Shown: one piece after another, positions 16,415 through 38,280 of the stretch
Numbering within the stretch: the first letter of the stretch is position 1
Layout of the letters: every line of letters starts with the position of its first letter
IMG/VR virus record: IMGVR_UViG_3300017991_000001
Span: 62,001 to 126,000 of that record
DNA length: 64,000 nt
Strand: one strand, 5' to 3'
The notes under the pieces: model-generated
Told to the model about the DNA's origin: nothing
The model's input: only the letters and a program-made list of their open reading frames with translations
Database searches by the model: none
Made by a program: the position numbers and the translations under genes

Positions 16415-16694
16415 CGGCGACGGTACGCCGGCCAGCGCGCTGGCCGACGAGCTGGTTGCGAAGTTCGTGTTCGAGCCTGACGGCAAGGGCGACTTCCACT
16501 GCGAGACGGGGGAGCATTACCTGGCGGATAAAGTTGCCCGGCATATGGGGACCGACGCCGACCTTGTCGAGTCGTTCGCGAACATCTTCTTCAACCGCGT
16601 CATGGAGCGGTTCATGGAGCCACACTCCGAGCTGCACGCCAAGTGCCTGAAGCTGGTGGAGGAAATGAAGGAGAAGGAGGATGCCGACAATTAG
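16407..16694 (+). CDS. Hypothetical protein
   Basis: Intact ORF with RBS. Confidence 0.55.
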   Translation: MTDGDGTPASALADELVAKFVFEPDGKGDFHCETGEHYLADKVARHMGTDADLVESFANIFFNRVMERFMEPHSELHAKCLKLVEEMKEKEDADN

Positions 16695-17040
16695 CATGAG
16701 GGCTGCCGGGCCCGGTACGTTGCGGGAGCACCCCATCGTACAGCACTTCCTGAAGCATTACCGTTCGCCGCATTTCTATACGCTGAGGACGTGCACGCGC
16801 TGCGATTATCAGATCGGGTATTTCGTCGACGAGAACGATCGCCTGTTCTACGACAGCGGCTGTGAGTGCACCTACCACAACGGCCCGAACATCGAGCCGC
16901 GCAGTTGGGAGATGCTGGTGGAGTACTTCCGTGCGCACCAGCCGGAGATGGACCTGCTGCTGGCCCTGAACATCGACCGGGCCGGCAACGACAATCCGAT
17001 TGCGGAGGATGACGAACCCGAAGGGGAAGACGATGAATGA
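16681..17040 (+). CDS. Family A paralog 1 (CxxC/CxC)
   Basis: HFLKHY..FYTLRTCTRC..IGYF...CEC...W..L...DLLLALNID. Confidence 0.7.
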   Translation: MPTISMRAAGPGTLREHPIVQHFLKHYRSPHFYTLRTCTRCDYQIGYFVDENDRLFYDSGCECTYHNGPNIEPRSWEMLVEYFRAHQPEMDLLLALNIDRAGNDNPIAEDDEPEGEDDE

Positions 17041-17251
17041 CGACGTCTGCTGGCTGGTCACCGTGCTTCACGACGGGCGATTGCTCAAATGCGCCGTGAA
17101 GTTCAAGCGCGACAGCGTGCCCGGCGACATGGTCAGGTATCCTACGGAGTGGCGCACGGAGGTCGGAGAGAGGCTGTTGCCCGAGCACGTCAGGTCCGCG
17201 GGTCCGATCGTGGCCGTCGAGGAGATCTTCGAGGTGCACGTGCGTGGATGA
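17033..17251 (+). CDS. Hypothetical protein within array A
   Basis: No family motif; overlaps both neighbours. Confidence 0.5.
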   Translation: MNDDVCWLVTVLHDGRLLKCAVKFKRDSVPGDMVRYPTEWRTEVGERLLPEHVRSAGPIVAVEEIFEVHVRG

Positions 17252-17633
17252 CAAGATGAGGGCGGTCTTGAGCTACATTGAGGAGCGCGTCGCTTCCAGG
17301 AACCTGGAAGAGGAAGTGGAGTGGTTCAAGAGGCGCCAACGGGCGGCCGAGATGGTTCCGGCGCTGAAGGACTTGCTGGTCAGGGAGGAGGCGTGGCTGT
17401 ATCGCGTGACTGGCTGTACGGCCTGCTATAGCCACTGCAAGTTTCACATTCCCAGCCTCCGCAGGAAAGAGGAGCCTTCCCTGTTCGCGAGTTTGTGCAA
17501 CTGTCACCAGTCCAACCTCATTGTGCTGGGATGGGAGGAGGTGGCGATGTTCTTCCTGAACCACCCCGGGCTGCTGGACCTGTACACGGCGTTCCAGATG
17601 GACGCCGTGGACGTAGAGGAAGCGAATGTCTGA
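17244..17633 (+). CDS. Family A paralog 2
   Basis: LYR..CTAC...CNC...WEEV...DLYTAFQMDAVDVEE. Confidence 0.7.
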   Translation: MDDKMRAVLSYIEERVASRNLEEEVEWFKRRQRAAEMVPALKDLLVREEAWLYRVTGCTACYSHCKFHIPSLRRKEEPSLFASLCNCHQSNLIVLGWEEVAMFFLNHPGLLDLYTAFQMDAVDVEEANV

Positions 17634-18057
17634 CCACTTGAAGAGTTTGCCGTGGTGGGAAGTTGAGCGGCTTTCACGGAAGTTGAGCGTAATGGCGCGG
17701 CGCCACTTCTCGGCGCACCGCCAGGGACGGCTCTACGCGCTCGAGCGTTGCAAGGAGTGTGGGGTGGCCGGAAAGGGGTGGTACATTGCCCTGAACGGGG
17801 AGCCGGTTTACCAGGACCGGTGTTTCTGTACGTTGAAGGGGGAGCGCAAGGACGACGTACATCGGGCGATGTGGGCCCACGTGGGCGATTTCCTGCTCCG
17901 GCACCCGCACCTGGCGGACATGCTGTTCGCGTTCGACATGGACGCCGTGGAAGTGGAGGAAGCCGATGTTTGCTCCGAAGCACAGCGGGTCCCCGAGGCG
18001 GCGGGGGCGGCCCAAGTTCGAGAAGATCATCACGCCCAAGTTCACCAAGGACGTTGA
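17626..18057 (+). CDS. Family A paralog 3
   Basis: HF..H..RLY..RCKEC...CFC...W...DMLFAFDMDAVEVEE. Confidence 0.7.
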   Translation: MSDHLKSLPWWEVERLSRKLSVMARRHFSAHRQGRLYALERCKECGVAGKGWYIALNGEPVYQDRCFCTLKGERKDDVHRAMWAHVGDFLLRHPHLADMLFAFDMDAVEVEEADVCSEAQRVPEAAGAAQVREDHHAQVHQGR

Positions 18058-18418
18058 GGAGCTCAAGAAGTGGGACACGGACATACGGGATATCCTCACG
18101 GACGACTCGATCATCCGTCAGTTCAGGGCCGAGGACCTGGCTCCGAGACTGCGGGAGCATTTCGAGAAGCACCGCCTTAGGCGTCTTTACCGCACGCACC
18201 GGTGCCCGCGCTGCAACGTGGCCGTCGGGTTCTTCCTGCCGGCCAAGGGCGAGCAACTGCGGGCGTCGTTGCGTTGCCATTGCGTGCTGAAGGGGGCACG
18301 TGACAAGTCGGCGCCGACCACGTTCGCGAACCTGGCCGATTTGCTGTTGGATCACAAGCGCGAGCTGGATGCGCTGCTGGCTTTCGACATGGACCTGATT
18401 GATCTGGAGGAAGCGTGA
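17966..18418 (+). CDS. Family A paralog 4
   Basis: HFEKH..RLYRTHRCPRC..VGFF...CHC...ALLAFDMDLIDLEE. Confidence 0.75.
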   Translation: MFAPKHSGSPRRRGRPKFEKIITPKFTKDVEELKKWDTDIRDILTDDSIIRQFRAEDLAPRLREHFEKHRLRRLYRTHRCPRCNVAVGFFLPAKGEQLRASLRCHCVLKGARDKSAPTTFANLADLLLDHKRELDALLAFDMDLIDLEEA

Positions 18419-18762
18419 GCGTTCTGAAACGAATGCATGACAACGAGGGTGTGATAAACGCCCGGTGGGAGCTGGTCGACGCCCTGGTGAACCACTTCTA
18501 TCTTCATCGCGTGGACAACATGTACAGGACCGGCCGGTGCTCGTGCGGACAGCCCTACGGCTACGTGATGAATTCGCACGGACAGCTGAACTTCAAGGAG
18601 AGTTGCGTGTGCAACGAGAGCCCGATACGGGCCATGAAGAAGGTGCTCGCCCACACCTGGAGCGACCTGGCGGCCCTGCTCTACGGGAAGCAGCAAGAGC
18701 TGTCGATGCTGTTCGACTTTGACATGGACCTGCTTGATCTCAAGGAGGGCAACGGCGATTAG
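18415..18762 (+). CDS. Family A paralog 5
   Basis: HFYLH..NMYRTGRCSC..YGY...CVC...W...MLFDFDMDLLDLKE. Confidence 0.75.
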   Translation: MSVLKRMHDNEGVINARWELVDALVNHFYLHRVDNMYRTGRCSCGQPYGYVMNSHGQLNFKESCVCNESPIRAMKKVLAHTWSDLAALLYGKQQELSMLFDFDMDLLDLKEGNGD

Positions 18763-19072
18763 CCTGGTACGCGAGAAGTGGCGTGTGTCCCAGTTGTTGA
18801 AGGCGCATTTCGAGAAGCACCGGGTGAACAGGATGTACCGCGTGGGGCGGTGCGAGAAGTGCCGGAAGCCATACGGGTATCTGCTCACCACCCACGCGCT
18901 GTTGTTCCTGGAGCGGTGCAAATGCTGCCAGAACAAGCGCCGGGCCGCGAGGACGAAGTATGCGCACAGTTTCGTGTGGATGGCCGGGGAGATGATGAGC
19001 AAGAAACGGGAGCTGTCGATGTTGCTCGACTTCGACATGGACCTGCTTGATCTGGAGGACGAAGGGCGTTGA
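18758..19072 (+). CDS. Family A paralog 6 (possible ATT start)
   Basis: HFEKH..RMYRVGRCEKC..YGY...CKC...MLLDFDMDLLDLED; start inferred 9 nt after AAGGAGG. Confidence 0.7.
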   Translation: MSLVREKWRVSQLLKAHFEKHRVNRMYRVGRCEKCRKPYGYLLTTHALLFLERCKCCQNKRRAARTKYAHSFVWMAGEMMSKKRELSMLLDFDMDLLDLEDEGR

Positions 19073-19416
19073 GCAGCGTAAGCAAGGATGGTTGGGACCT
19101 GGCGTTCAAGCTGTTGAGGCACTTCCACGCTCACAGGATGAACAGGATGTACCGCACGGGCCGTTGCGACGCATGCAATTCTCCTTACGGGTATGTTCTG
19201 GAGGAGAAGAAGGAGAACGGCAAGCGGTGGAACTTGTTCTTCCGCGAGACTTGCGAGTGCTGGCGCGACGGGTTGCGCCTGGGCCGGAAGGGTATGGTGC
19301 ACAGCTGGTTCGACATCGCCAACGAGCTGCAGGACAGGGAACAGGAGCTTCACATGCTGTTCGACTACGACTTGGACCTGGTGGATCTGCAAGATGGCAC
19401 GCTTTCGCGAGCCTGA
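19069..19416 (+). CDS. Family A paralog 7
   Basis: HFHAH..RMYRTGRCDAC..YGY...CEC...MLFDYDLDLVDLQD. Confidence 0.75.
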   Translation: MSSVSKDGWDLAFKLLRHFHAHRMNRMYRTGRCDACNSPYGYVLEEKKENGKRWNLFFRETCECWRDGLRLGRKGMVHSWFDIANELQDREQELHMLFDYDLDLVDLQDGTLSRA

Positions 19417-19771
19417 CAAGTGGCAGGTGGGTGTACAGCTCTGCGCTCACAGCATGGAGCATTGTCTGAAGGGCCGTTTCTACCGATGGCGCCGGTGCGA
19501 GGACTGCGGGGAACCGATCGGGGTGTGGCTGCACTCCTGCTTCGACCCGAAGTACAGGGACGAGTGTACGTGTGATGTCGGGGCGGCCCGCCGCCTTACG
19601 ATCGGGAATAAGATGCTGTGGGGCGAGGTGGCGGAGGTGATCATGCGCACCCCGGCTGCGATCGACGCCTTCCTGGCGTATGACCTGGACATTCTGGACT
19701 TGGAGGAGGGCTGTGAAACAAACCGAGCTGACGCGCGGCTTGAACACGCTGCACAGCGACAAGACGTATAG
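19394..19771 (+). CDS. Family A paralog 8
   Basis: RFYRWRRCEDC..IGVW...CTC...W...AFLAYDLDILDLEE. Confidence 0.75.
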   Translation: MARFREPDKWQVGVQLCAHSMEHCLKGRFYRWRRCEDCGEPIGVWLHSCFDPKYRDECTCDVGAARRLTIGNKMLWGEVAEVIMRTPAAIDAFLAYDLDILDLEEGCETNRADARLEHAAQRQDV

Positions 19772-20171
19772 GCAGACCTCAACTTGGGAATTGAGGCCGG
19801 AAGGTACGGCTAAGCGCGCGACGCGGATTCTGCGTGTGCGGGATTACTTCATCCACAACTACACGCACCGTTCGCGGGTTTTCATGCGGGACGTCAAGGC
19901 CCGCTCGTTCAAGCGCCGTTGCGTCAACTGCGGCGCCATACTGTACGTCTTCGTCTACAGGGCGTTCCCGTACATGGTGGGTTGCTATCACGGCAATGCG
20001 AAGGAGTTCGACAAGATCCCGGGCATCAAGTATGGGCGCTTGTATCGTCTCTTTTGGGAGCAGGTGGGTCGCTGGCTTGAGGACGACAAGTTCTTCGATC
20101 TGTTGCTGCTGGCGGGTACCGATCCGGTGGACCTGGAAGACGATGGCGCTGAAACCACCGACGTCGTGTGA
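19713..20171 (+). CDS. Family A paralog 9
   Basis: YFIHNY...RRCVNC...GCYH...W...DLLLLAGTDPVDLED. Confidence 0.7.
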   Translation: MKQTELTRGLNTLHSDKTYRQTSTWELRPEGTAKRATRILRVRDYFIHNYTHRSRVFMRDVKARSFKRRCVNCGAILYVFVYRAFPYMVGCYHGNAKEFDKIPGIKYGRLYRLFWEQVGRWLEDDKFFDLLLLAGTDPVDLEDDGAETTDVV

Positions 20172-20478
20172 CGTCTTCACGATGCGCGTGCGGGATAGTT
20201 TCATGGCACGTCGCATGGATGGTCGCGTGTTCCGCACACGGCGCTGTCGGCGCTGCAAAGAGGCAGTGGGCTTCTTCGTGTACCCGGCCGAGCCCTTTGA
20301 GGTCGTGGCACCGCAGCTTCACTTTCGTCCTTGCCAGTGCGGAGGGGCGAAGCAGAACTGGCCTGTGTTATGGGAGGCGCTGTCCGCGTGGGCATCGAAG
20401 AACCCGAAGGCGTGGGACTTGTTTCTGGCGTTCGACATGGACATGCTGGATCTGGCGGATGCCGACGTCAAAGGCTGA
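20143..20478 (+). CDS. Family A paralog 10
   Basis: RVFRTRRCRRC..VGFF...CQC...W...DLFLAFDMDMLDL. Confidence 0.75.
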   Translation: MALKPPTSCDVFTMRVRDSFMARRMDGRVFRTRRCRRCKEAVGFFVYPAEPFEVVAPQLHFRPCQCGGAKQNWPVLWEALSAWASKNPKAWDLFLAFDMDMLDLADADVKG

Positions 20479-20896
20479 CATCACGCGCGAGCTGCGCAGG
20501 CTGATGCGGGACGCATCGAGGTATGGACGCTACTACATGGAGCACCACCTCTCGGAGAACGAGACCTTTCTCAAGGTGGCGCAGTACTTCTACAGCCACT
20601 TCGAGTTCAGCAGTTTGCATCGCAAGGTGATCCTGAGGGACGTGAAGCGCAGGTCCTACCGGACCGACCGCTGCGAGATCTGCGGTGAGCCGGCCTACTG
20701 GTTCATCTACGGCGGGGTGCTGTTCGCGTTCCGGTGCTACCACGGCGACCGCAAGCGCCACCCGTCCAAAGGGGGCGGGCACGTGTACAAGGAGCGGTGG
20801 CGGTGTATTTGGCGTTATCTGGAGGACGACAGGGTGCGGGACATGCTGTTGTCGTTCGGGATCGACCAGGCGGAGTTGGAAGATGGCGCTGACTAA
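20459..20896 (+). CDS. Family A paralog 11
   Basis: RSYRTDRCEIC...RCYH...W...DMLLSFGIDQAELED. Confidence 0.7.
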   Translation: MPTSKADITRELRRLMRDASRYGRYYMEHHLSENETFLKVAQYFYSHFEFSSLHRKVILRDVKRRSYRTDRCEICGEPAYWFIYGGVLFAFRCYHGDRKRHPSKGGGHVYKERWRCIWRYLEDDRVRDMLLSFGIDQAELEDGAD

Positions 20897-21314
20897 CGAA
20901 CCCTCGACGTGGGAGCTTGGCGAGGCAGACTGGTGGTTCGACAAGCGGGATCTGGAGAACGACCCGCTCCTGCGGTATTTCGTCGAACACTACGACATAT
21001 GGCACCCGGCGATGCCGCCCGCGGACCTGGTCGGGCGGTCGTACCGCATTCTCATCTGTACCCGGTGCGGCGAAGTTCATCGCTGGTTCGTCTTCCAGGA
21101 GAGGACGCTTTGGCGGTACGGGTGCAAGTGCAGCTCGCCGAATCAGGCGTTTCGGGCGTTTCGGGAGCGCCTGACGACGCTGAGGAACTACTTCGAGGCG
21201 AACCCGCGGCTGACGGACCTGCTGCTGGGTTTCGGGATCGATGCCGTGGAGGCGAACGGAGGGGAACGCGAGGATGTTCTCGGATCAGCAGATAGCAGGC
21301 AGCTCCTTCATTAG
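20883..21314 (+). CDS. Family A paralog 12
   Basis: YFVEHY..RSYR..CTRC...CKC...DLLLGFGIDAVE. Confidence 0.7.
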   Translation: MALTNEPSTWELGEADWWFDKRDLENDPLLRYFVEHYDIWHPAMPPADLVGRSYRILICTRCGEVHRWFVFQERTLWRYGCKCSSPNQAFRAFRERLTTLRNYFEANPRLTDLLLGFGIDAVEANGGEREDVLGSADSRQLLH

Positions 21315-21642
21315 GACCTACAAGGACAACCCCATCTTCCGACACTTCATGAAGCACTACATCTACGGCGGCAGAATCAGCCCGAAGAGGTCGTATCGGC
21401 TGGCGCGTTGTCCGGGGTGCAAATGTTGCAGGGGTTGGGTGGTCAACGTTCACGGGCACGCCTTCTACTACGCGTGCAGATGCTGGAACATAAAGAACGA
21501 ACTCGTGAACGAGTCCTGGGATTACATATTCAGGATCTTCGACCACAACCCGCCGCTCAAGGACTTTCTGTTGGCGTTCGGGATGGACGCCGTGGCCGTG
21601 GAGGAGATGCATGAAACTTCGGACACCGAGGTAAAGGGATAA
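21274..21642 (+). CDS. Family A paralog 13
   Basis: HFMKHY..RSYRLARCPGC...CRC...W...DFLLAFGMDAVAVEE. Confidence 0.7.
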   Translation: MFSDQQIAGSSFIRTYKDNPIFRHFMKHYIYGGRISPKRSYRLARCPGCKCCRGWVVNVHGHAFYYACRCWNIKNELVNESWDYIFRIFDHNPPLKDFLLAFGMDAVAVEEMHETSDTEVKG

Positions 21643-24021: not shown

Positions 24022-25368
24022 CTATTCGGTAAGTTCGCGCAGGGTGGCCAGGCCGCCGTAGCCCAGGCCGCCTGCCAGGCTCGAGCGTAGCGCGGCCAGT
24101 GGTATGGTGGTCTGCCCTTGGAGGTCGGAGACCATGCGGTGGCTGCGTACGGCCGAGATCGGGTCGAAGAGGCCGCCCAGCTGCGGGGACTGGTGGACCA
24201 GCCCGGAGAAGCCTTCGGGGTTGGTCTCAATGATGCGGGCCTTGCCCTTCGGCGTGATGGCCACGTCGAAGCTGAAGGCACGGTTCTTGACGTATTTCGG
24301 CTTGATGCCCTTGGCTTTGCCGAGGGCCTTCTCGACGGCGCGCTCCGCGGTGCGGAAGTAGCCGGGCCGCTGGCCGGCCAGGACGCTGAGCTCCGACAGG
24401 CCGCCGAAACGGTGAGCGGTGGAGCCCGGCAGGACCTTGTTGCCGATGGCGTGCACGCGCAGTTCCAGGTTGGCGGGCTGCCCCGTGGTGGCCATGATCG
24501 CCGCCTCGTCGACGGGGCCGAGCTTGCCGATGGGGAAGCGCTTCTGAATCATCAGGCCCCTGCGGCCTTTGCGCTTCATCATCTCTTTCATCATTTCGCG
24601 GGCGTGCAGGCCCGGGATGCGCTGCCGCAGGATCACCTGCTCGTCTTCGGGCAGCTTCAAGAGCCTTTTGTAGGTGATGTTCTCGGGGCGGCCAAGGAAC
24701 TTGTCCATGATGGTGCGTTGCACCTTCAGGCGGCTTTTCGGGTTGAGGGCCAGCGCCCCGGCCAGGATCTCCCGCAGGTCGTCCTTCTCGGTGATCAGCG
24801 TGCCGGCCGTTTGCGACTCGTCGGTGCCCTTCATGATCCACTTCTTGCCGAGCTTCTTGTCCAGGTGCTTCTGCAGTTCGGTGGCCCGGCGCATGGGGTC
24901 CTTGATCTTGAAGATGCGCCTGGGGAGTTCGTCGCCCAGGATGGTTTTGGGATACAGGTCCGGTACGGCCTTGCCGAAGATCTTGGACTCCATCCGCTTG
25001 GACTCGATGCCCGGGATCTCCTTACCGAAGCCGATGTTGCCTCCGCGCACCCGGCTCTTGGTGAACTGGGTCTCCGAGATCGGCGAGAAGAAGACTTCCT
25101 TGAGTTGCTTGGACTTGGCGGACGTGGGCATGCCGCGCGCCCTGGAGCCGTACTGTAGGTAGTTGAGCAGGTCCGAGTCGTAGGCTTCCCCCTTGGGCAC
25201 TTCGCGGGCCAGGCCCTTTTCCCTGATCTTACGAGCCAGGCGGTTGCCCATTGAACCGGCGCGTATGCGGCGTGCCAGCAGGAAGGTGATGATGGCCGGC
25301 AGACCGATGGCGCCCGCGGTCATCCACGGGCTTTCGATCAGTTCATCGTTCTCTCGAGGTTTAGCCAT
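24022..25368 (-). CDS. ATP-grasp fold ligase-like protein with hydrophobic termini
   Basis: WIMKG, LMIQKRF, ELRVHAIGNKV, FSFDVAI...IIETNP..SG; the only convincing minus-strand gene. Confidence 0.65.
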   Translation of the reverse strand: MAKPRENDELIESPWMTAGAIGLPAIITFLLARRIRAGSMGNRLARKIREKGLAREVPKGEAYDSDLLNYLQYGSRARGMPTSAKSKQLKEVFFSPISETQFTKSRVRGGNIGFGKEIPGIESKRMESKIFGKAVPDLYPKTILGDELPRRIFKIKDPMRRATELQKHLDKKLGKKWIMKGTDESQTAGTLITEKDDLREILAGALALNPKSRLKVQRTIMDKFLGRPENITYKRLLKLPEDEQVILRQRIPGLHAREMMKEMMKRKGRRGLMIQKRFPIGKLGPVDEAAIMATTGQPANLELRVHAIGNKVLPGSTAHRFGGLSELSVLAGQRPGYFRTAERAVEKALGKAKGIKPKYVKNRAFSFDVAITPKGKARIIETNPEGFSGLVHQSPQLGGLFDPISAVRSHRMVSDLQGQTTIPLAALRSSLAGGLGYGGLATLRELTE

Positions 25369-28369: not shown

Positions 28370-28991
28370 CGACACCGCCGGCGACTGCGGGAGCGAGCTG
28401 TTCCGCTGCCCCGCATGCGACCACATCTTCCAGTACCCCGCCGAGGTGGAGTGCATCTACGACAAGGAGTACGTGGCCACCCGCTACGACGTCTACGAGA
28501 CGACGCCGCTGATGAACCACCTGCGGCTGGGTTTCGTGAAGGGCTTCGTGAGTGGGGGCAGGCTCCTGGACGTGGGCTACGGTAACGGGTCTTTCCTGAA
28601 GCTGGCAGGCAAGAACGGCTTCGACATCTACGGCAAGGACGTGCACGGGGCCGACTACGGCATCCGTGAGGTGGAGCTGTCCGACTTCGCGTGGGAGCTG
28701 GTGACGTTCTTCGACTCGCTCGAGCACTTCCCCGATCTCACCCCGGCGCGCGAGATGCGTGCCAGGTACGTGATCGTGTCCATACCCTACAGACCCGATA
28801 CGTTCCCGGCCGACCTGGGCTGGAAGCACTACCGACCCGGGGAACACCTCCACTACTTCACGGTGGAGTCGCTGGCGGCCTTCTTTAGCCACATGGAGCT
28901 GATCAGGATATCGACGCTGGAGGACGCTGTGAGAGGCATGCGGGAAGGTTTGCCCAACATCGTCACCTGCGTCTTCAAACTAAAAGAATGA
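28347..28991 (+). CDS. SAM methyltransferase (Methyltransf_23-like) with N-terminal Zn ribbon
   Basis: CPVC...CPAC; LLDVGYGNGSF; FFDSLEH; EHLHYF. Confidence 0.85.
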   Translation: MPQCPVCDDTAGDCGSELFRCPACDHIFQYPAEVECIYDKEYVATRYDVYETTPLMNHLRLGFVKGFVSGGRLLDVGYGNGSFLKLAGKNGFDIYGKDVHGADYGIREVELSDFAWELVTFFDSLEHFPDLTPAREMRARYVIVSIPYRPDTFPADLGWKHYRPGEHLHYFTVESLAAFFSHMELIRISTLEDAVRGMREGLPNIVTCVFKLKE

Positions 28992-29907: not shown

Positions 29908-30957
29908 ATGCTGGTCAAGATGTATCCGCAGGAGAAGGGCCTGACGTTTGGCCTGAACAAGTACCCGGGCGCCGAGCTGCGCGGCTGCGTCAACGATTCA
30001 GAGGACATGGCCAACGAGCAGGTCAGGGCCTACGACTGGGACCCCGGCAATATCCGGCTCTTGACCGACTTCCGCTGCACGCGTAAGGAGATGTTCAAGC
30101 GGCTGGAGTGGCTGGTGGACGTGAAGAAGGGTGATCGTGTCTTCTTCCACCAGAGCGGGCATGGCGTGCAGTTTCCCTCCCGCTCCTACAGCGGCGAGCC
30201 CGATGGCCTGCTCGAGGCGTTCTGCCCGATCGACTTCGCGTGGTGTCTGGACGGGATGGTGACCGACAAGGACTACGTGGAGTTCTTCAGCCGCATCCCC
30301 AGAGGGGTTGAGTTCACCTGGGTGAACGACTCCTGCCACTCGGGCGACCTGACCCGGGCGCAGCCCGGCAACCCGCACGGCCCAACGATCGTCCCGCGGT
30401 CCTATCCCGTCCCCGAGGACATCGCCTGGCGGCACAAGGGCCTGAAGACCCGCAACATCAAGAGCATGGAGCGGGCCATGGTCTGCGGGAAGATGGACGT
30501 GGGTTTCGTGAGTGCCTCACGCTCCGATCAAACAGCAGCCGACACCTTTGTCAACGGACGCCCCTGCGGGGCGCTCACGCATTACTTCCTCCAGACATTG
30601 CGAGGAAATCGCCAGCTCCCGCTCGAAACGGTGGTGAGCATGACGAGGGACACGTTGCGGGCGCAGGGTTATACCCAGGAGCCGCAGGCCGAAGGCCGGC
30701 GCGTGGACAAGCCGTTCATGATAAACAGGGCGGTTCCCGGTGCGCCCGGTGCTGTAGGTTGCATCAGCCAAACAGGGCCAACCGGTCCGGTCGAGGAGCA
30801 GGTGGGCGTTACCCACGCTTCCACCCCCGAGTCTCACTTAGATCCGGTCGGACCGGGCGGTGTGACCGGCGTTATGGGTCCGGCTGGGACCTACTTGCTG
30901 CCTTTCGACAAGGAAGGCGCGCAGAACGTCTGTCCGCACTGCGGGAAGACAAAATGA
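29908..30957 (+). CDS. Metacaspase / caspase-like peptidase C14
   Basis: GLNKY..AELRGCVND, FFHQSGHG, CPIDF, DSCHSG (His-Cys dyad intact). Confidence 0.9.
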   Translation: MLVKMYPQEKGLTFGLNKYPGAELRGCVNDSEDMANEQVRAYDWDPGNIRLLTDFRCTRKEMFKRLEWLVDVKKGDRVFFHQSGHGVQFPSRSYSGEPDGLLEAFCPIDFAWCLDGMVTDKDYVEFFSRIPRGVEFTWVNDSCHSGDLTRAQPGNPHGPTIVPRSYPVPEDIAWRHKGLKTRNIKSMERAMVCGKMDVGFVSASRSDQTAADTFVNGRPCGALTHYFLQTLRGNRQLPLETVVSMTRDTLRAQGYTQEPQAEGRRVDKPFMINRAVPGAPGAVGCISQTGPTGPVEEQVGVTHASTPESHLDPVGPGGVTGVMGPAGTYLLPFDKEGAQNVCPHCGKTK

Positions 30958-32449: not shown

Positions 32450-32450
32450 G

Positions 32451-32660
32451 ATGCCGTACATCCTGAAGTTCCACTCACCCCGCGACGGTGTGCTGTCCAC
32501 CACGCACATCGACGCGGAGGACGACCCGGACGCCATGGACCAGGCGCTGGAGCGTATCAACAGACGTACCGCGGAAGGCCTGGAGGGGGATCACGTACTG
32601 ATCGGACCAGGGGGCCGCAAACTCAAACTCGATCTTGTCGGCTGCGCGCCGGCGGACTGA
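32451..32660 (+). CDS. Small hypothetical protein
   Basis: Intact ORF. Confidence 0.5.
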   Translation: MPYILKFHSPRDGVLSTTHIDAEDDPDAMDQALERINRRTAEGLEGDHVLIGPGGRKLKLDLVGCAPAD

Positions 32661-32679
32661 CCACCACGGAAAATCGAAT

Positions 32680-33279
32680 ATGTCTCGCGACGAGTTTCAG
32701 ATCCTGTTTAACCAGGAGCCAACCGCCCGCGATTACTTTCCAGAGGGGCTCGACGAGAACCCGCTGGACCTGTTCGTCAAGGCGTTGGCGAGCGGGAACT
32801 ACGCGGAGACCGGGTTGTCGGGGCTTCGCCGCAAGGGCACGATTTCGGACCTACCGGCGCACGCCAACGCGACCCAGATTGTAGACTACCAGGACAAGCA
32901 CGGACGGCTGCCCCGCCGCATTTCCAAGACACTGCGCACGGCTGAGGGAGGAAACGTCTTTATTCATGGCTTGTGGTTCTACTCGGCGACGGGCGTGCTG
33001 TGCGACACGTTTTTCCACGCTGCAGGTGAGAAGCACTGGGACGCCAGCTGGGACGAGGAAAGCTTCTTTTGCACGCGTGCTCCAAGGGCGCCTGGCAGAC
33101 ACACGCCGTTCCTGCACTCGGAAGAACATAACACGGAGCGTCCTCCGTTTGCTGTCGCGTGGTGGTGGGAGCGGCTGACGAAGCTGCCGTTGCCGCCGAT
33201 GATGAATTATATGGTGAACAAGGAGCTGACCTTCTCGCAACTGGCCGACTTGCTGACGGTGGGCGCGCCATGGACATAA
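32680..33279 (+). CDS. Family B paralog 1 (GVLC...GAPW)
   Basis: YSATGVLCD...WWW..LPL...FSQLADLLTVGAPW. Confidence 0.75.
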   Translation: MSRDEFQILFNQEPTARDYFPEGLDENPLDLFVKALASGNYAETGLSGLRRKGTISDLPAHANATQIVDYQDKHGRLPRRISKTLRTAEGGNVFIHGLWFYSATGVLCDTFFHAAGEKHWDASWDEESFFCTRAPRAPGRHTPFLHSEEHNTERPPFAVAWWWERLTKLPLPPMMNYMVNKELTFSQLADLLTVGAPWT

Positions 33280-33713
33280 AGAAGGACTCGCCCCTGATGG
33301 CGTGGATCAAGGCGCTGGGTGACGACAGCTACATCACGCAGTGGAAGGATTACGGCTACCACCCGCCCCAGCTGCGGACCGTGATCTACGAGCCGTCGGG
33401 GACGGGCAAGGAGGCGACACACATCCTCTGGTCGCCGATGGGCGTCCTGGCCGACGCGTTCGTGCAGCGGCACTGCAAGGCGCCGCTGTACTCGATGTGG
33501 GTCGACCGTTGGATGCGGGTCAGCCCCGTGGGCGGCCCGCACCTGTCCTTTGACGAGGCGTGGCCGCTGCCCTGGCCCATCGAGACGTGGTGGAAGAACT
33601 GGCATGCCGACCTTCCTTTCAAGAAAGTAGGGGACTACATGTTTGAACCGCAAGCGAACTTCCGGCAGTTGGCCGACCTGTTGGCTGTGGGGGCACCGTG
33701 GGTGAGCCACTAG
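33270..33713 (+). CDS. Family B paralog 2
   Basis: WSPMGVLAD...WW...DLPF...FRQLADLLAVGAPW. Confidence 0.75.
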   Translation: MDIKKDSPLMAWIKALGDDSYITQWKDYGYHPPQLRTVIYEPSGTGKEATHILWSPMGVLADAFVQRHCKAPLYSMWVDRWMRVSPVGGPHLSFDEAWPLPWPIETWWKNWHADLPFKKVGDYMFEPQANFRQLADLLAVGAPWVSH

Positions 33714-34219
33714 AGTCGTGGATACTCAGCCTGTCGACCAAGGAGTACGAGCAGGAGATGGATTCCCCCATGCTGCGGCGCATCTACAGGGAGGCTGTCG
33801 CCACGAGCGACAACGTGTGCTACCGGGGCCAGCTGCTGAAGAAGGGCGAGAAGATTGTGATCCCGGACAACATTGATCGGGTCGGCGACTCGGCTTTCTG
33901 GGATATGCAGAGGCATCTGGTGACGCTCGGCAAGGTCATCAAGTTCACGGCTTCCGGCGTGCTGTGCCAGCAGTGCCTGAAGTACGCGCCGATGCCGACG
34001 CGCGGCGGCATGTGGGACGGGCTCGAGTTCAGCTGTAAGGGACTCTTCTGTCAGGAGTCGCCGCATCTGCATATGTGGCCGCTGCCATGTGTGGTGCGGG
34101 CCTGGTGGAGCGACTACGAGGATCTGCCGCTGGAGCCGCTGAAACCGTACCTGGAGAACATCAAGATGTCGTTTGACGAGCTGGCTACGCTGTTAGCGGT
34201 GGGCGCGCCATGGGCATGA
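33698..34219 (+). CDS. Family B paralog 3
   Basis: FTASGVLC...WW..DLPL...FDELATLLAVGAPW. Confidence 0.75.
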   Translation: MGEPLESWILSLSTKEYEQEMDSPMLRRIYREAVATSDNVCYRGQLLKKGEKIVIPDNIDRVGDSAFWDMQRHLVTLGKVIKFTASGVLCQQCLKYAPMPTRGGMWDGLEFSCKGLFCQESPHLHMWPLPCVVRAWWSDYEDLPLEPLKPYLENIKMSFDELATLLAVGAPWA

Positions 34220-34647
34220 CGTATTGGGACTACCAGCCGCTGGGACTCTGGATCGAAGGGCTGCGTAACGTCTACAAGGAGATCGATTACGGTGACGACG
34301 CGCCGCCCGATCGCGTGCCGTTGTACACCGGCCACCCGGCGGAGCACGCTTTGAGCTTGAGGAGGTTTTCACCTGCCGGCGTGTTGTGTGCCCTTCTAAC
34401 CCTAAAGGGGCCGTCGGTGGGCGCGCATATGAGCAACGGGGAATTCAAATGGGTGGAAGGTTGCGCCGACCGGCCCGTCTACCGTACAGCGAAGTGGGCG
34501 GACGAAATGCCGGAGCCCGTCATTGCGTGGTGGCACAAGTCTCACGACGACCTGCCGTTCGAGAAGCTGATGCCGTTCCTGACCGACCCGCACTTGCGGT
34601 TCAAGCCGTTCGCTGACCTTTTGGAGATGCACGCGCCATGGGCGTGA
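34210..34647 (+). CDS. Family B paralog 4
   Basis: FSPAGVLC...WW..HDDLPF...FKPFADLLEMHAPW. Confidence 0.75.
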   Translation: MGMTYWDYQPLGLWIEGLRNVYKEIDYGDDAPPDRVPLYTGHPAEHALSLRRFSPAGVLCALLTLKGPSVGAHMSNGEFKWVEGCADRPVYRTAKWADEMPEPVIAWWHKSHDDLPFEKLMPFLTDPHLRFKPFADLLEMHAPWA

Positions 34648-35288
34648 GAGACGAGATCCTGGAGAAGGTGTTCAAGGGCAGCTCCGAGCAGCACGCGATG
34701 CGCTTGAAGCTGGTGACGCCCATGGAGGTGTGGGTGCAGTCGCTGCGCGGACGGCTTGATAACGAACACCGGACGGTATACGAACAGGCCCACACCACGC
34801 AGCTGCGCACGCGTGGCAGTTTCACCAGAGGCGCGGCCAGCGCGATAGCAGACTTCACGAGGGTCAAGATGAAGGAAGAGGGTTTCTGGCGGAAGATCAT
34901 GCCGCCCACGCCTATCGGCAAGTCCACAACGATGGCGCAGACTACAGTGAAGCAGGCGTACAGGAGCACGCCGAACGTGAACGGTGACGTCTTCGGTTTG
35001 GACATATGGGACTACTCGGCGCTGGGCGTGCTGTGCGACCTGTATCTGCGTTTCGAGCGCCAGCACAGGGGCGACGCCTCGTGGCGGGGTAACGAGTTCC
35101 AGTGGTTGGTCAAGGGCAAGTTGAGGAGATCGAATTCATGCAAGAAGGTTCCCACGCCGGTAAGAATGTGGTGGGAACGGCATCACGGGGAACTTCCGTT
35201 CAGGAACCTGAAGGCCTACCTGCGCAACCCGTATCTGAAGTTCGAACAGTTCGCGGACCTGCTGGAGATGCACGGGCCATGGACCTGA
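34638..35288 (+). CDS. Family B paralog 5
   Basis: YSALGVLCD...WW..HGELPF...FEQFADLLEMHGPW. Confidence 0.75.
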   Translation: MGVRDEILEKVFKGSSEQHAMRLKLVTPMEVWVQSLRGRLDNEHRTVYEQAHTTQLRTRGSFTRGAASAIADFTRVKMKEEGFWRKIMPPTPIGKSTTMAQTTVKQAYRSTPNVNGDVFGLDIWDYSALGVLCDLYLRFERQHRGDASWRGNEFQWLVKGKLRRSNSCKKVPTPVRMWWERHHGELPFRNLKAYLRNPYLKFEQFADLLEMHGPWT

Positions 35289-35890
35289 AAGGTTACAAGC
35301 CGCTGCCGCCACTGACGCTGTGGGTGGATGCGCTGCGCAGCAAGGGATATAACCCTACGGACGCGAAGGCGCTCCGCAAGAAACGCAGGATTACGATCGA
35401 CGGCGTCGAGCTCGTCTCGGGCGATAATGTGATGGCCCACGACTCGGGCAAGACGATGTACATACAAGACTGGGCATACTCGCCGATGGGGGTGCTGTGC
35501 GATCTCTACCTGAACTACGTGCCGCTTTCCTACCGGTCCAAATGGCGCTGCGCGTGGAAGGGGCAGTACTTTCGTTGGATGGTCCGTGGCAAGTGGAGCA
35601 GGCAAAAGTCCAGGCATCAGATGCCCACGCCCATCTACGAGTGGTGGAGCAAGCACCACCGCAAGCTGAAGATCGAGCCGCTGAGGCCGTTCCTGAAGGA
35701 CAAGGACCTCAGGTTTGACATGTTTGCGGACCTGCTGGAATTGCACGCGCCGTGGTCGATGGACCCGGCGCTGCTGGGCTACGAAGCTGACCGGCCCAAG
35801 CCTTTGCCTTTTTCCACGTTGCCTCTTGACAGGCATATCCGCGGACCTCGCTTCCGCTGTTTAGAGAAACCCGAGGGAGTAGAGGAGTGA
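35279..35890 (+). CDS. Family B paralog 6
   Basis: YSPMGVLCD...WW..H...FDMFADLLELHAPW plus a tail. Confidence 0.75.
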   Translation: MDLKGYKPLPPLTLWVDALRSKGYNPTDAKALRKKRRITIDGVELVSGDNVMAHDSGKTMYIQDWAYSPMGVLCDLYLNYVPLSYRSKWRCAWKGQYFRWMVRGKWSRQKSRHQMPTPIYEWWSKHHRKLKIEPLRPFLKDKDLRFDMFADLLELHAPWSMDPALLGYEADRPKPLPFSTLPLDRHIRGPRFRCLEKPEGVEE

Positions 35891-36351
35891 TCGGGATCGA
35901 TCACCAGGGGCCGTTGCAGTGGTGGTTGAAGGAGATGAAGAAAGGGTACAAGGACCACACCCGACACGGGTACTACAGTCGCCCGCCGCTATGCCGGACT
36001 GTTGAAACCTTTCGGACGTATTCCCCCGGCGGTGTTTTGTGCCAGGCGTACAGCGGCGTTATGGGCACGCATGGGTTCAGCTACGCCTACGAGGGGCATG
36101 GTCGCCTCTACCCGGAATGTGTACCGTTCGTGTGGCGGACCCGGTGCGGCCGTACGTGTGGCAGCATCTTCAGCGTGCCCAAACCGGTGCGCGAGTGGTG
36201 GGCGAGCCACTACTACAGCGAGCTGCCGTTCAGCGCGTTGATCCCCTATCTCGAAGACAAGAACCTTACGATCGACGCCTTCTCGGTGCTCCTGATGACG
36301 GGGGCGCCGTGGCTGGGTTGTGAGGACAAACCGTTGAAAGGATCGAAATGA
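35887..36351 (+). CDS. Family B paralog 7
   Basis: YSPGGVLC...WW...ELPF...FSVLLMTGAPW. Confidence 0.75.
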   Translation: MIGIDHQGPLQWWLKEMKKGYKDHTRHGYYSRPPLCRTVETFRTYSPGGVLCQAYSGVMGTHGFSYAYEGHGRLYPECVPFVWRTRCGRTCGSIFSVPKPVREWWASHYYSELPFSALIPYLEDKNLTIDAFSVLLMTGAPWLGCEDKPLKGSK

Positions 36352-36524
36352 GCGAAGCGGCCAAACGGGCCAGAAGGTTGCGGCAGCAGGGGTTTGACAA
36401 GGCGTTCGTGGACCGGTCGACCGGCGCGGTCTGCGTGCGTTGCAGCCAGTGTGAGGCGCTGGTGATATGCGGGGTGCCCTGCCACGAGAAGGGCTGCCCG
36501 AACGAGGTGAGGGATGACGACTGA
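36348..36524 (+). CDS. Small Cys-rich phage protein (58 aa, not in ORF track)
   Basis: VRCSQCEALVICGVPCHEKGCPN; ATGA overlap. Confidence 0.65.
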   Translation: MSEAAKRARRLRQQGFDKAFVDRSTGAVCVRCSQCEALVICGVPCHEKGCPNEVRDDD

Positions 36525-36792
36525 GGAAGACCTGAAAGAGGCGCTGGCCGGCATGTGCTACCAGTTCGCCTACCGCGGCAAGACGAAAGAGGGCCGCCTG
36601 ACCATCTGGACGGGCGGCCTTTCTGCACTGGAGCTGGCGTTTCAGGAGCTGGGGTGGGAGGACCCTCACCCTTACCCGGAAGGGGAATGCCAGAACGAGG
36701 GCTGCTACAACGAGGCGACCTGCGGGAAGCCTACACCCGAGGGTTACAAGTTCCTGTGTGGGAGCTGCGATGCCAAAAAACACTCTCCGTAG
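36514..36792 (+). CDS. Hypothetical Cys-rich protein
   Basis: GGLSALE..F..LGW; C...C...C...CGSC. Confidence 0.6.
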   Translation: MTTEEDLKEALAGMCYQFAYRGKTKEGRLTIWTGGLSALELAFQELGWEDPHPYPEGECQNEGCYNEATCGKPTPEGYKFLCGSCDAKKHSP

Positions 36793-37060
36793 CGTCAAAA
36801 TCACGTTCGACCGGAAGGATCGCTGCATCGACGAATACGGTGTTTGGGTGTGGTGGTACCGGACTTCTAGCCGCTTTGCTATCCAGCAGGCCGATAGTGA
36901 CAACCACGTCGACCCGGACAGAATGATCGGTATCCCACGTAACCTCCGGGTCCTGAAGGCCCTGATCAAGGAGCTGCAGTGGCACGTGACGGACCTGGAG
37001 GCGGACCAGCTGACAAAGGGGACGCTCGATGGAGATACCACCGATGCCGGCGGCACGTAA
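36770..37060 (+). CDS. Family C paralog 1 (EADQL)
   Basis: IGIPRN..VLK...TDLEADQLTKGTLD. Confidence 0.7.
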   Translation: MPKNTLRSVKITFDRKDRCIDEYGVWVWWYRTSSRFAIQQADSDNHVDPDRMIGIPRNLRVLKALIKELQWHVTDLEADQLTKGTLDGDTTDAGGT

Positions 37061-37370
37061 GCGCAAGCGCGTGAACTTCGACGTCAAGATCCCCGTAACA
37101 GACAATCATACGGAGGGGGTGATCGGGGGCTTGCGGCTCACCGACTTCCTTGCCGACGAGCACACACCCGTAGGGAAGGTGTGGTTTACGCCCATAGTCA
37201 GGTGGACGTACCCGAGAAGCGGCAAGAAGAGCGAGACGCGCGGAAACATACTGTCGATCCCGCGCGACCCGAAGGCCCTGCGCAAGATCGCGGCGTTTCT
37301 GCTGGACGTGGCCGACGACGCGGAGGCCGATCAACTGACGAAAGGAACACTCGATGCCGAACCAGATTGA
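37029..37370 (+). CDS. Family C paralog 2
   Basis: LSIPRD..ALR...DDAEADQLTKGTLD. Confidence 0.7.
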   Translation: MEIPPMPAARKRKRVNFDVKIPVTDNHTEGVIGGLRLTDFLADEHTPVGKVWFTPIVRWTYPRSGKKSETRGNILSIPRDPKALRKIAAFLLDVADDAEADQLTKGTLDAEPD

Positions 37371-37629
37371 GCGGGTGATGTTGCCGCTGACGAGGGACGG
37401 TGAGCCGTTCATGCTCGAAGTGCTGGACGACGAGGCGCGCGAACGGGTGTCTTTCCGTCCGGTCATAATGGACAAGAACACGTACGCGAACTACGACCTC
37501 GAGCGGTACGGCGAGATGGTAACCGTACCGCGGGTTGCGCGCGTGTTGCGCGAGATCGGACAGATCCTGCTGGACAGGGCGACGGACATCGAAGCCGATC
37601 AACTGGCGAAAGGGACACTGGATGACTGA
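37354..37629 (+). CDS. Family C paralog 3
   Basis: VTVPRV..VLR...TDIEADQLAKGTLD. Confidence 0.7.
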   Translation: MPNQIERVMLPLTRDGEPFMLEVLDDEARERVSFRPVIMDKNTYANYDLERYGEMVTVPRVARVLREIGQILLDRATDIEADQLAKGTLDD

Positions 37630-37975
37630 GAGCATACCGTATCCGTACGAGTACAACATAACGGTGGGTGGCATGCTGGTGGACACGTGTCACCGGATGG
37701 TTGGTCTGCCCGGACACTTCGAGGTTCGGATCACGCCGTTTTACAGGGGCGGATCGTACGTTGACCGGGGAAACAACGCGTCGCCGATCACCATCCCTCG
37801 AAAGAAGGAGGTGCTGGAGCGGTTCATCAAGGTGTTCCAGGCGGCGATAACGGACATAGAGGCCGAGGCGCTGGCAAGGGGGTTGGAGGAGATCAGGTTC
37901 GAGCACACCGAGACGGGAATCTGCCGGAAGCGTGACCCCGAGACCGGACAGGAGCTGAGAAGGGAGAGCGGATGA
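37622..37975 (+). CDS. Family C paralog 4
   Basis: ITIPRK..VLE...TDIEAEALARG. Confidence 0.7.
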   Translation: MTESIPYPYEYNITVGGMLVDTCHRMVGLPGHFEVRITPFYRGGSYVDRGNNASPITIPRKKEVLERFIKVFQAAITDIEAEALARGLEEIRFEHTETGICRKRDPETGQELRRESG

Positions 37976-38280
37976 CGGATCACGAAAAGAAGGTGCAGGA
38001 CCTGGTTATCGAGTTTCCGCCGAGCTTTGCCGGGTGGTTCAACGCTCGTTCGTGCGGGGTTTGCATCTCTTTCAGGCAAAGAGGCACGAGTCTTCACGAC
38101 ATGACGAGGGAAGACAACGCCGCACCTATGAGGTGTACGAACCCAACCATCGTGTTCCCCAATAATGTCCAGTTCCTGCGCACGCTGAGCGAGGCGCTGG
38201 GGATCGTGGCCGATGACCTGGAAGCCGACAACCTGACCCGGGGCATCGAGGAGGAGAAGGTGAGGGTTTACGCATGGTGA
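37972..38280 (+). CDS. Family C paralog 5
   Basis: IVFPNN..FLR...DDLEADNLTRG. Confidence 0.7.
   Translation: MTDHEKKVQDLVIEFPPSFAGWFNARSCGVCISFRQRGTSLHDMTREDNAAPMRCTNPTIVFPNNVQFLRTLSEALGIVADDLEADNLTRGIEEEKVRVYAW

What the first reader, a model, noticed from the sequence alone, without database searches (positions are those of the whole stretch)
16681..38280. Three unrelated paralog arrays share one architecture: the conserved 3' end of each gene encodes the start of the next
Seen: in family B the near-invariant terminal Pro-Trp codons (CCA-TGG or CCG-TGG) contain the next gene's ATG/GTG at five consecutive junctions (33270, 33698, 34210, 34638, 35279). In family C the conserved K-G-T-L-D gives AAAGG(G/A) as RBS and GAT-G as the next ATG at three junctions (37029, 37354, 37622). 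In family A the acidic tail (D-L/V-E-E/D) often spells GGAGG/GAGGA a few bases before the next start (e.g. 17626, 17966, 18415, 19069, 19713). Inferred: the 'conserved motifs' may be partly dual-coded translational coupling signals. The arrays would then behave like self-linking cassettes, where recombination or duplication at the conserved 3' block yields a new, automatically translated gene with a variable 5' part. This could be an undescribed diversification system.
Basis: partly seen in the sequence, partly recalled or inferred. Interest (0 to 1): 0.8.

Follow-up and report, generated by a model that had tools for sequence, protein, structure and literature searches.

The report
Overlapping tandem gene families in phage
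Three old families of small, tandemly repeated genes in a giant phage are packed so that each gene's end overlaps the next gene's start, as almost all genes in this genome are; relatives have lost whole genes by recombination at the shared gene ends, but nothing indicates a dedicated diversification system.

Summary
The window is part of a phage genome of at least 211 kb and holds three unrelated tandem paralog families: A (13 genes plus one distant copy), B (7) and C (5). In all three, the next gene's start codon or Shine-Dalgarno (SD) sequence lies inside the conserved 3' codons of the gene before it.

1. Overlapping stop/start is genome-wide: 40 of 50 junctions outside the arrays overlap too.
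2. The C-terminal motifs are conserved as protein. B6 and B7 keep Pro-Trp with no start there. A stand-alone family A copy and its orthologue keep the tail far from any start. AlphaFold puts the family A and B motifs in confident helices. Synonymous codon identity between paralogs equals the codon-usage expectation.
3. Local synonymous tuning does exist. The rare Pro codon CCA (6.5%) gives ATG at 4 of 5 family B junctions.
4. Diverged relatives lack whole units (A5, A8, A10, A8-A10, B2, B2-B3), and every mapped breakpoint lies in the conserved 3' block.
5. Trees show that these are losses of old paralogs, not births of new genes.

There are no near-identical repeats and no sign of dedicated diversification machinery. 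Verdict: ordinary tandem families with coupled translation and unequal recombination. The three protein families themselves are new and of unknown function.

The parts
16681..17040 (+). Family A gene A1. Zn-ribbon CxxC...CxC; its tail has diverged to an acidic run.
   Evidence: orthologue L070:1003-1368 at 65% aa identity
17033..17251 (+). x1, a 72-aa non-family gene inserted between A1 and A2. Absent in relative L070.
17256..17633 (+). Family A gene A2
17626..18057 (+). Family A gene A3. It has no stop after the tail motif and overlaps A4 by 92 nt. The public gene caller did not call it. The same arrangement is present in L070.
17966..18418 (+). Family A gene A4
18415..18762 (+). Family A gene A5 (GTGA overlap with A4). 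Absent in L070-type relatives.
18785..19072 (+). Family A gene A6. Start as given by the gene caller; alternative TTG starts at 18719 and 18734.
19069..19416 (+). Family A gene A7. This is the sequence modelled: pLDDT 91.5.
19394..19771 (+). Family A gene A8. Absent in L017, L018 and L070.
19713..20171 (+). Family A gene A9. Present in L017 and L018, absent in L070.
20203..20478 (+). Family A gene A10. Absent in L017 and L070.
20459..20896 (+). Family A gene A11
20883..21314 (+). Family A gene A12
21274..21642 (+). Family A gene A13. In L070 an unrelated 131-aa gene takes its place.
2653..3120 (+). A0, a stand-alone distant family A copy. It keeps the LLxFDLDxWDL tail about 55 nt before the next gene's start.
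   Evidence: orthologue P0026 has a 101-nt gap after the gene
32680..33279 (+). Family B gene B1. Ends ...GAPWT*; CCA-TGG holds the ATG of B2.
33270..33713 (+). Family B gene B2. Absent in L001/L002 and in L003/L004.
33698..34219 (+). Family B gene B3 (GTG start inside CCG-TGG). Absent in L003/L004.
34210..34647 (+). Family B gene B4. Alternative start at 34216 (ATGA). This is the sequence modelled: pLDDT 86.9.
34638..35288 (+). Family B gene B5. Alternative starts at 34644 (GTGA) and 34698.
35279..35890 (+). Family B gene B6. Keeps Pro-Trp (CCG) 43 codons before its stop, with no start on it.
35887..36351 (+). Family B gene B7. Keeps Pro-Trp (CCG) 11 codons before its stop, with no start on it.
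36770..37060 (+). Family C gene C1
37044..37370 (+). Family C gene C2.
37354..37629 (+). Family C gene C3. Its ATG lies inside the GAT-G of C2's KGTLD motif.
37622..37975 (+). Family C gene C4. Its ATG lies inside the GAT-G of C3. Its own motif is ARGLEE and carries no start.
37972..38280 (+). Family C gene C5. Its motif is TRGIEEE and carries no start.

Best explanation
The region holds three old, fast-evolving tandem multigene families of small proteins of unknown function. They lie in the accessory region of a phage of at least 211 kb that infects a bacterium. Family A is a Zn-ribbon family. Family B has a fold resembling DUF8296. Family C is a small family that was not modelled here.

The whole genome is written as long same-strand gene trains in which nearly every gene overlaps the next by 1-50 nt and carries the next gene's SD in its own tail. 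In the arrays the C-terminal helices are conserved for protein reasons, so the same junction recurs from unit to unit.

Where a start lies on those codons, synonymous positions have been tuned: CCA or CCG gives ATG or GTG, GAT-G gives ATG, and xxA-TGA gives ATGA. Downstream genes are probably translated by coupling or reinitiation (inferred).

The 3' blocks are among the few stretches that keep 12-20 nt of exact identity between paralogs. All mapped breakpoints of the whole-unit, in-frame deletions that distinguish relatives lie in them, which fits short-homology or unequal recombination (shown by comparison; mechanism inferred). This is a passive by-product of the architecture. It is not a dedicated diversification system.
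For: - Families and gene models.
- Overlap and SD are genome-wide.
- Protein-level constraint: Pro-Trp is invariant in B6 and B7 with CCG and no start. A0 and P0026 keep the tail away from any start. The AlphaFold models are confident (pLDDT 91.5 and 86.9) and place the C-terminal motifs in helices. Synonymous codon identity in the 3' block equals expectation.
- Local tuning: CCA is 6.5% genome-wide but occurs at 4 of 5 junctions. Relatives swap ATG and GTG between the two adjacent start positions.
- Unit-precise differences with breakpoints in the 3' blocks: A8 and A10 in L017/L018; A5 and A8-A10 in L070/L071/L072; B2 in L001/L002 and B2-B3 in L003/L004.
- The L070 type is seen in four independent assemblies and co-occurs with the window type in run X5.
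- Trees pair positional orthologues and place the missing genes outside those pairs, so the absences are losses.
- No repeats above about 80% identity, and no excess of promoters or terminators.
- Bacterial host: tmRNA.
Against: - No expression or start-site data exist, so coupling is inferred only.
- Family B junctions B1-B3 lack a recognisable SD. This fits reinitiation but remains untested.
- Only three diverged genotypes are available, all as short contigs, so gains or duplications could have been missed.
- Selection would remove deletions that are out of frame or not unit-precise, so the clustering of breakpoints at 3' blocks partly reflects survivorship.
- The exact identical stretches between paralogs are short (17-20 nt at most) and some also lie inside the genes. 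Homology alone therefore does not fully explain why all six events map to the 3' end.
- Tree roots are midpoint only, and A8, A10 and B2 are long branches.
Confidence: 0.7

Rival explanations
1. The conserved 3' blocks are selected as dual-purpose linkers that combine a recombination site with translational coupling. The arrays would then be self-linking cassette systems that generate and exchange new, automatically expressed genes.
For: - All six mapped indels among relatives have their breakpoints inside the 3' blocks.
- Rare codons give ATG at the junctions.
- A non-family gene, 15925-16089, is flanked by a 12-nt direct repeat of the junction (GATGGCGAGTAA) and is absent in L070.
- Three unrelated families share the layout.
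Against: - The motifs are kept where no start lies on them.
- Synonymous identity in the blocks is at expectation.
- All differences are losses of deep paralogs; no new or chimeric units were seen.
- The paralogs are homologous over their whole length.
- The overlapping layout is genome-wide.
- No associated reverse transcriptase, recombinase or near-identical repeats were found in the proteins scanned or the repeats searched.
Confidence: 0.12
2. Pure inheritance. The junction, including CCA-TGG, was simply copied with each tandem duplication, and no selection acts on the overlaid start signals. Differences among relatives are random deletions filtered by selection for intact genes, not recombination at the blocks.
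For: - B1 and B3 share a 17-nt identical block, and B4 and B5 share a 12-nt one. The four CCA codons may therefore reflect only two lineages.
- Selection would hide deletions that are not unit-precise.
Against: - Other synonymous sites between the same paralogs are saturated, so retention of a 6.5% codon by descent alone is unlikely.
- B6 and B7 (no start on Pro-Trp) carry CCG.
- Relatives switch between CCA/ATG and CCG/GTG while gaining or losing the neighbouring ATGA, so an ATG is kept within 2 codons in most cases.
- In each indel the flank identity switches within about 10-30 nt of shared sequence.
Confidence: 0.13
3. The copy-number differences are assembly artefacts, caused by assemblers collapsing or jumping at the repeated 3' blocks.
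For: L001 is 100% identical to L002 up to position 2050 and 100% identical to the window after it. It switches in a 33-nt shared stretch, which is typical of a k=31 assembly chimera.
Against: - The shared blocks between paralogs are at most 20 nt of exact identity, far below the k=141 of the ENA assemblies.
- The deletion-bearing contigs are diverged from the window on both sides, at 59-93% aa identity.
- The same junctions recur in independent samples and assemblers: L017 and L018; L003 and L004; L070-L073.
Confidence: 0.03

Closest known systems
Translationally coupled overlapping genes in phage and bacterial operons (ATGA/TGATG overlaps, termination-reinitiation; established knowledge)
   Same: The start codon of the downstream gene lies inside or next to the end of the upstream ORF, and the SD is encoded by the upstream gene's last codons. 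This holds genome-wide here.
   Different: In family B the preferred start lies 10-16 nt upstream of the stop, inside an invariant Pro-Trp pair, rather than on the stop codon, and often has no SD. Coupling itself has not been tested.
Tandem multigene families evolving by unequal crossing-over, such as paralog arrays in jumbo phages and giant viruses and poxvirus 'genomic accordions' (own knowledge)
   Same: Same-strand tandem paralogs. Copy number differs among close relatives. Breakpoints lie at homologous positions.
   Different: No recent duplicates were found: synonymous sites are saturated and only losses were seen. Exact homology is very short (at most 20 nt).
PeSL promoter-early/stem-loop cassettes of T4-type phages (Arbiol et al. 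2010, PMC2839356; Comeau et al. 2014, PMC4122927)
   Same: Short conserved motifs recur between small non-essential genes in a hyperplastic region. They are the sites of insertion and deletion between relatives and carry the expression signal for the adjacent gene.
   Different: PeSLs are intergenic promoter-plus-terminator elements. Here there is no intergenic space, the repeated element is coding sequence conserved as protein, and the signal is translational. No excess of promoters or terminators was found. Mini-circles were not examined.
Modular phage evolution with 'linker' or boundary sequences at gene borders (Susskind and Botstein's model; lambdoid boundary sequences; own knowledge)
   Same: Recombination joints coincide with gene boundaries, so functional units are exchanged or lost whole.
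   Different: Here the joint lies between paralogs within one genome, not between alleles of different phages. The one apparent inter-genotype recombinant (L001) is probably an assembly chimera.

Membership tests
Translationally coupled overlapping gene pairs | The downstream start codon overlaps or abuts the upstream ORF's end | tested here: met
   By the independent gene caller's starts plus A3, 20 of 23 array junctions and 40 of 50 other junctions overlap by 1-92 nt.
Translationally coupled overlapping gene pairs | Translation of the downstream gene depends on translation of the upstream gene | not testable with these tools
   This needs reporters or ribosome profiling. No RNA run holding the sequence was listed in a kind='any' search, which is not a dedicated RNA search.
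Tandem multigene family shaped by unequal recombination | Same-strand adjacent genes that are homologous over their whole length | tested here: met
   BLASTP clusters and alignments.
Tandem multigene family shaped by unequal recombination | Copy number varies among relatives, with breakpoints at homologous positions of paralogs | tested here: met
   Six unit-precise differences, each switching flank identity within the shared 3' block.
Tandem multigene family shaped by unequal recombination | Recent duplicates or concerted evolution (gene conversion) | tested here: not met
   The ratio of observed to expected same-codon use at identical residues is 0.98-1.06. Paralogs are 17-45% identical. The longest exact match is 20 nt.
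PeSL-type mobile regulatory cassettes | An intergenic sigma-70 promoter plus stem-loop terminator between the small genes | tested here: not met
   The genes overlap and leave no intergenic space. Promoter and terminator counts are not above those of shuffled sequence.
PeSL-type mobile regulatory cassettes | Indels between relatives are bounded by the repeated motif | tested here: met
   This holds by analogy only: the indels are bounded by the conserved coding 3' block.
Dedicated diversification systems (DGR, shufflon, cassette gene conversion) | Near-identical template/variable repeats, or inverted recombination sites | tested here: not met
   Direct repeats are 60-83% identical. Inverted repeats are only scattered, chance-like pairs. 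All genes in the arrays lie on one strand.
Dedicated diversification systems (DGR, shufflon, cassette gene conversion) | An associated reverse transcriptase or site-specific recombinase | tested here: inconclusive
   None was found among about 50 window proteins scanned with Pfam or PHROGs. The rest of the genome of at least 211 kb was not examined.
Pfam DUF8296 (for family B) | Sequence match to PF26948 at the gathering score | tested here: not met
   No member matches even at E<=10. There is only a fold-level resemblance to a viral DUF8296 cluster, TM 0.61/0.66.

The most novel reading that the evidence does not exclude
The conserved C-terminal coding block with its embedded start acts as a coding-sequence counterpart of T4 PeSL cassettes. 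It would be a portable joint at which whole genes can be deleted, and possibly inserted or exchanged between co-infecting relatives, while staying in frame and translationally coupled. Phage populations would then carry presence/absence repertoires of these (possibly host-interaction) genes. The non-family gene at 15925-16089, flanked by a 12-nt junction repeat, would be an example of an insertion.
Probability: 0.15. Interest if true: 0.6.

Novelty: new member of a known kind. Interest (0 to 1): 0.33.

Why it matters
The case shows how densely overlapping phage gene trains place translation signals on protein-coding C-termini, with measurable synonymous tuning. It also shows how the one block that stays conserved in an old tandem family becomes the place where whole genes are cleanly lost. 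This bears on how accessory regions of jumbo phages change in content.

It documents three protein families with no Pfam, PHROG or PDB match. Two of them have confident predicted folds, and no homologue closer than a distant Zn-ribbon core was found outside this lineage's metagenomic contigs. It does not reveal a new diversification mechanism.

Tried and rejected
- Megablast of both array regions against 50,697 phage records: no match.
- Pfam and PHROGs on family members: nothing significant.
- Foldseek against the PDB for both models: no hit at E<=0.001. ESM Atlas searches gave only hypothetical viral clusters.
- Profile searches of 5.8 billion and 1.8 billion proteins: the only non-self hits were orthologues on related metagenomic contigs, plus a distant Zn-ribbon core for family A. 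Family C returned only the window's own proteins.
- IMG/VR scans returned only the same genome.
- A metagenome scan with the flanking cupin gene returned 45 unrelated phage contigs with no A, B or C homologues.
- The first attempt to scan with the family B alignment failed because no conserved stretch was long enough.
- L001 at first looked like a natural recombinant between two genotypes. I rejected it as evidence because it is a perfect 100%/100% chimera that switches in a shared 33-mer in a k=31 assembly.
- Read laying had only assembled contigs to lay, not raw reads. It could show that the window type and the L070 type co-occur, but not rare variants.
- I looked for junction repeats outside the families and found only the 15925/16079 pair.
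- C6 (38274-38579) was considered as a sixth family C member. The support is circular and weak (E 1.7e-4 against an HMM that included it), so it is left out.

Full report
**What the window is.** The 64-kb window has about 62% G+C, and nearly all high-GC3 ORFs lie on the + strand. Exact-protein look-ups place it on a 211,084-bp contig present in IMG/VR and in several sediment and seawater metagenomes. It carries a weak portal match, an ATP-dependent ligase, methyltransferases, a caspase-like peptidase and an AcrVA2-like protein. It also carries a tmRNA gene at 42426-42790, found by ARAGORN and by Rfam at 93.6 bits. It is therefore a jumbo phage of a bacterium. No catalogued phage is similar at the DNA level.

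**The observation.** All-vs-all BLASTP and alignments confirm three unrelated tandem families.
- Family A has 13 genes at 16681-21642 and a distant stand-alone copy at 2653-3120.
- Family B has 7 genes at 32680-36351.
- Family C has 5 genes at 36770-38280.

A gene caller run independently on near-identical public contigs chose the same family B starts: 33270, 33698, 34210, 34638 and 35279. It also chose most of the family A and C starts. Three points differ: it preferred 37044 to 37029 for C2, it started A6 and A10 after short gaps, and it missed A3, which overlaps A4 by 92 nt. At B3/B4 and B4/B5 a second in-frame start two codons later overlaps the stop (ATGA, GTGA).

**The layout is not special to the arrays.** Using the gene caller's coordinates for 74 genes, 40 of 50 junctions outside the arrays also overlap (1, 4, 8, 11, 14, 17 ... 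nt). Most starts have a GGAGG, GAGG or GGAG motif inside the upstream gene's tail. C-terminal hexapeptides are enriched in D, E and G genome-wide (29-35% against 21% overall). The arrays follow the genome's general style. They stand out only because their tails are homologous.

**Why the motifs are conserved.** Four tests point to constraint on the protein.
1. Pro-Trp is invariant in all seven family B paralogs and five orthologues. This includes B6 and B7, where it lies 43 and 11 codons before the stop and no start sits on it. Those two use the common codon CCG.
2. The stand-alone family A copy keeps LLxFDLDxWDL about 55 nt before the next start. Its orthologue P0026 ends with the motif and is followed by a 101-nt gap.
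3. AlphaFold models built on the family alignments are confident (A7: pLDDT 91.5; B4: pLDDT 86.9) and place the C-terminal motifs in well-predicted helices.
4. At columns where two paralogs share a residue, they share the codon exactly as often as codon usage predicts. This holds in the 3' block (ratios 1.06, 0.98 and 1.06 for A, B and C) and elsewhere (1.05, 1.04, 0.99). The blocks therefore show no nucleotide-level conservation and no gene conversion.

The two members without an embedded start (C4, C5) have LEE/IEE in place of TLD. This could be subfamily divergence or relaxed dual coding.

**Dual coding exists, but only locally.** CCA makes up 6.5% of Pro codons here, GAT 17.6% of Asp and AAA 11.7% of Lys. 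CCA-TGG, which gives ATG, occurs at 4 of the 5 family B junctions in the window and in L003. No CCC, which would give CTG, occurs at any of the 10 junction Pro-Trp pairs.

Relatives with CCG-TGG (GTG) mostly have xxA-TGA (ATGA) two codons later, and window and relative swap ATG and GTG between the two positions. C2/C3 and C3/C4 use the rare codons AAA, ACA and GAT. Synonymous sites are thus tuned to provide a start, as expected for overlapping genes. Three family B junctions have no recognisable SD. This suggests reinitiation by terminating ribosomes, which is an inference.

**Comparison with relatives.** Three diverged genotypes were recovered from metagenomes.
- L070/L071/L072/L073 come from four independent assemblies. 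They read A1-A2-A3-A4-A6-A7-A11-A12 and then an unrelated gene. They lack x1, A5 and A8-A10.
- L017 and L018 read A7-A9-A11-A12-A13, lacking A8 and A10.
- L002 (and the L002-identical part of L001) reads B1-B3-B4-B5, lacking B2. L003 and L004 read B1-B4, lacking B2 and B3.

Gene order is collinear and only presence or absence differs. In each case where the switch was mapped base by base (A5, A8, A10, A8-A10 and B2-B3), the relative matches the upstream gene up to the conserved 3' block and the downstream unit from that block on. Examples: A7|A8 switches within GACCTGGACCTGCTGGATCTG|GAGGAGGGC. B1|B3 switches within the shared CGGTGGGCGCGCCATGG. In L070, 29-31 nt align to both flanks at the A5 and A8-A10 joints. 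Contigs of run X5 show that the window type and the L070 type co-occur.

**Direction of change.** Maximum-likelihood trees pair positional orthologues (A1, A2, A3, A4, A6, A7, A9, A11, A12, A13; B1, B3, B4, B5). They place A5, A8, A9, A10 and B2 outside those pairs (midpoint roots; A8, A10 and B2 are long branches). The absent genes are therefore older than the split of the genotypes, and the differences are deletions. No recent duplicate, no chimera and no unit with a new 5' part was seen.

Paralogs are only 17-45% identical in protein, and their longest exact DNA match is 20 nt. Repeats in the region are 60-83% identical. Neither a reverse transcriptase nor a recombinase turned up among the proteins scanned.

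**A caution.** L001 at first looked like a recombinant between genotypes. It is 100% identical to L002 up to base 2050 and 100% identical to the window afterwards, switching in a shared 33-mer. In a k=31 assembly this is most likely a chimera, and I do not use it as evidence. The unit deletions are not open to the same doubt. The shared blocks are far shorter than the assemblers' k, both flanks are diverged from the window, and the junctions recur in independent samples.

**What the proteins are.**
- Family A is a small Zn-ribbon protein (CxxC...CxC) with an N-terminal helix and a C-terminal helical bundle. A profile search of 1.8 billion representatives found only 27 hits. These are orthologues in related contigs and a distant group of stand-alone proteins of 83-101 aa that share the Zn-ribbon core. 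Four of the five lack the tail; P0035 ends with a similar FDTD.
- Family B has no sequence match to any Pfam family. Its fold resembles a viral DUF8296 cluster (TM 0.61/0.66).
- Family C has no relatives outside this genome.
- Neither model has a PDB fold match.

Function is unknown. The setting, a same-strand train of small fast-evolving genes near methyltransferases and an AcrVA2-like gene, suggests accessory host-interaction genes. This is inference only.

**Conclusion.** The finding describes a real and neat pattern, but the pattern results from three ordinary causes.
1. The genome is packed throughout with overlapping, probably coupled genes.
2. Old tandem families have C-terminal helices conserved as protein.
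3. Short-homology recombination at those blocks removes whole units.

The closest known concepts are translational coupling, unequal crossing-over in tandem families, and, by analogy only, the PeSL cassettes of T4-type phages (PMC2839356, PMC4122927). The data do not exclude that the blocks also promote gain or exchange of units, which I rate at about 0.15. The 12-nt junction repeat around gene 15925-16089 hints in that direction.

Noticed in passing
window:42426-42790 (+): A phage-encoded tmRNA gene with tag peptide AKTKVVAGDFGASRVALAA, found by ARAGORN and by Rfam RF00023 at 93.6 bits. It points to a bacterial host.
   Followed up: yes
window:15925-16089 and the junctions at 15924-15935 and 16078-16089: This 54-aa non-family gene is flanked by an exact 12-nt direct repeat of the junction, GATGGCGAGTAA (...DGE* over MASK...). 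The gene is absent in relative L070, which keeps one copy of the repeat. It looks like a cassette-type indel outside the families.
   Followed up: partly
window:3924-4959, 6996-8017, 10197-11242, 61808-62833: Four further pairs of adjacent paralogous ORFs (BLASTP E<1e-3). Tandem duplication is common across this genome.
   Followed up: no
window:17626-18057 with 17966-18418; L070:1732-2166: A3 has no stop after its tail motif and reads 92 nt into A4 in another frame. The same long overlap is present in the diverged relative. The public gene caller missed A3 in every contig.
   Followed up: partly
L001:1-4535 (Logan contig of SRR6963352): A perfect chimera: 100% identical to L002 up to base 2050 and 100% identical to the window after it, switching in a shared 33-nt stretch in the B5 N-terminus. 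Probably an assembly artefact and not a natural recombinant.
   Followed up: yes
L070:3946-4341: In the L070-type relative the last family A gene (A13) is replaced by an unrelated 131-aa gene. x1 (17033-17251) and the 95-aa gene at 16407-16694 are also absent. The whole region is hyperplastic.
   Followed up: partly
window:23053-25367, with the minus-strand ORF 24022-25323: This is the only large stretch without + strand genes. It holds a lone 433-aa minus-strand gene with no convincing Pfam match. The L070 relative has two such minus-strand genes (453 and 433 aa).
   Followed up: partly
window:39734-40984; 29908-30957; 25969-26673; 28347-28991: An AcrVA2-like protein (PF26125, precomputed), a caspase-like peptidase C14 and two methyltransferases lie between and beside the arrays. 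This fits an accessory or anti-defence region.
   Followed up: no
P0027 (2612 aa) and P0030 (2249 aa): Two very large proteins from elsewhere each match the N-terminal half of the family A profile five times, so the Zn-ribbon core also occurs as an internal repeat.
   Followed up: no
window:16625-16671 and 34682-34728: A 47-nt stretch at the 3' end of gene 16407-16694 is 77% identical to the B5 N-terminal region, the place where the L001 chimera switches. Probably coincidence.
   Followed up: no
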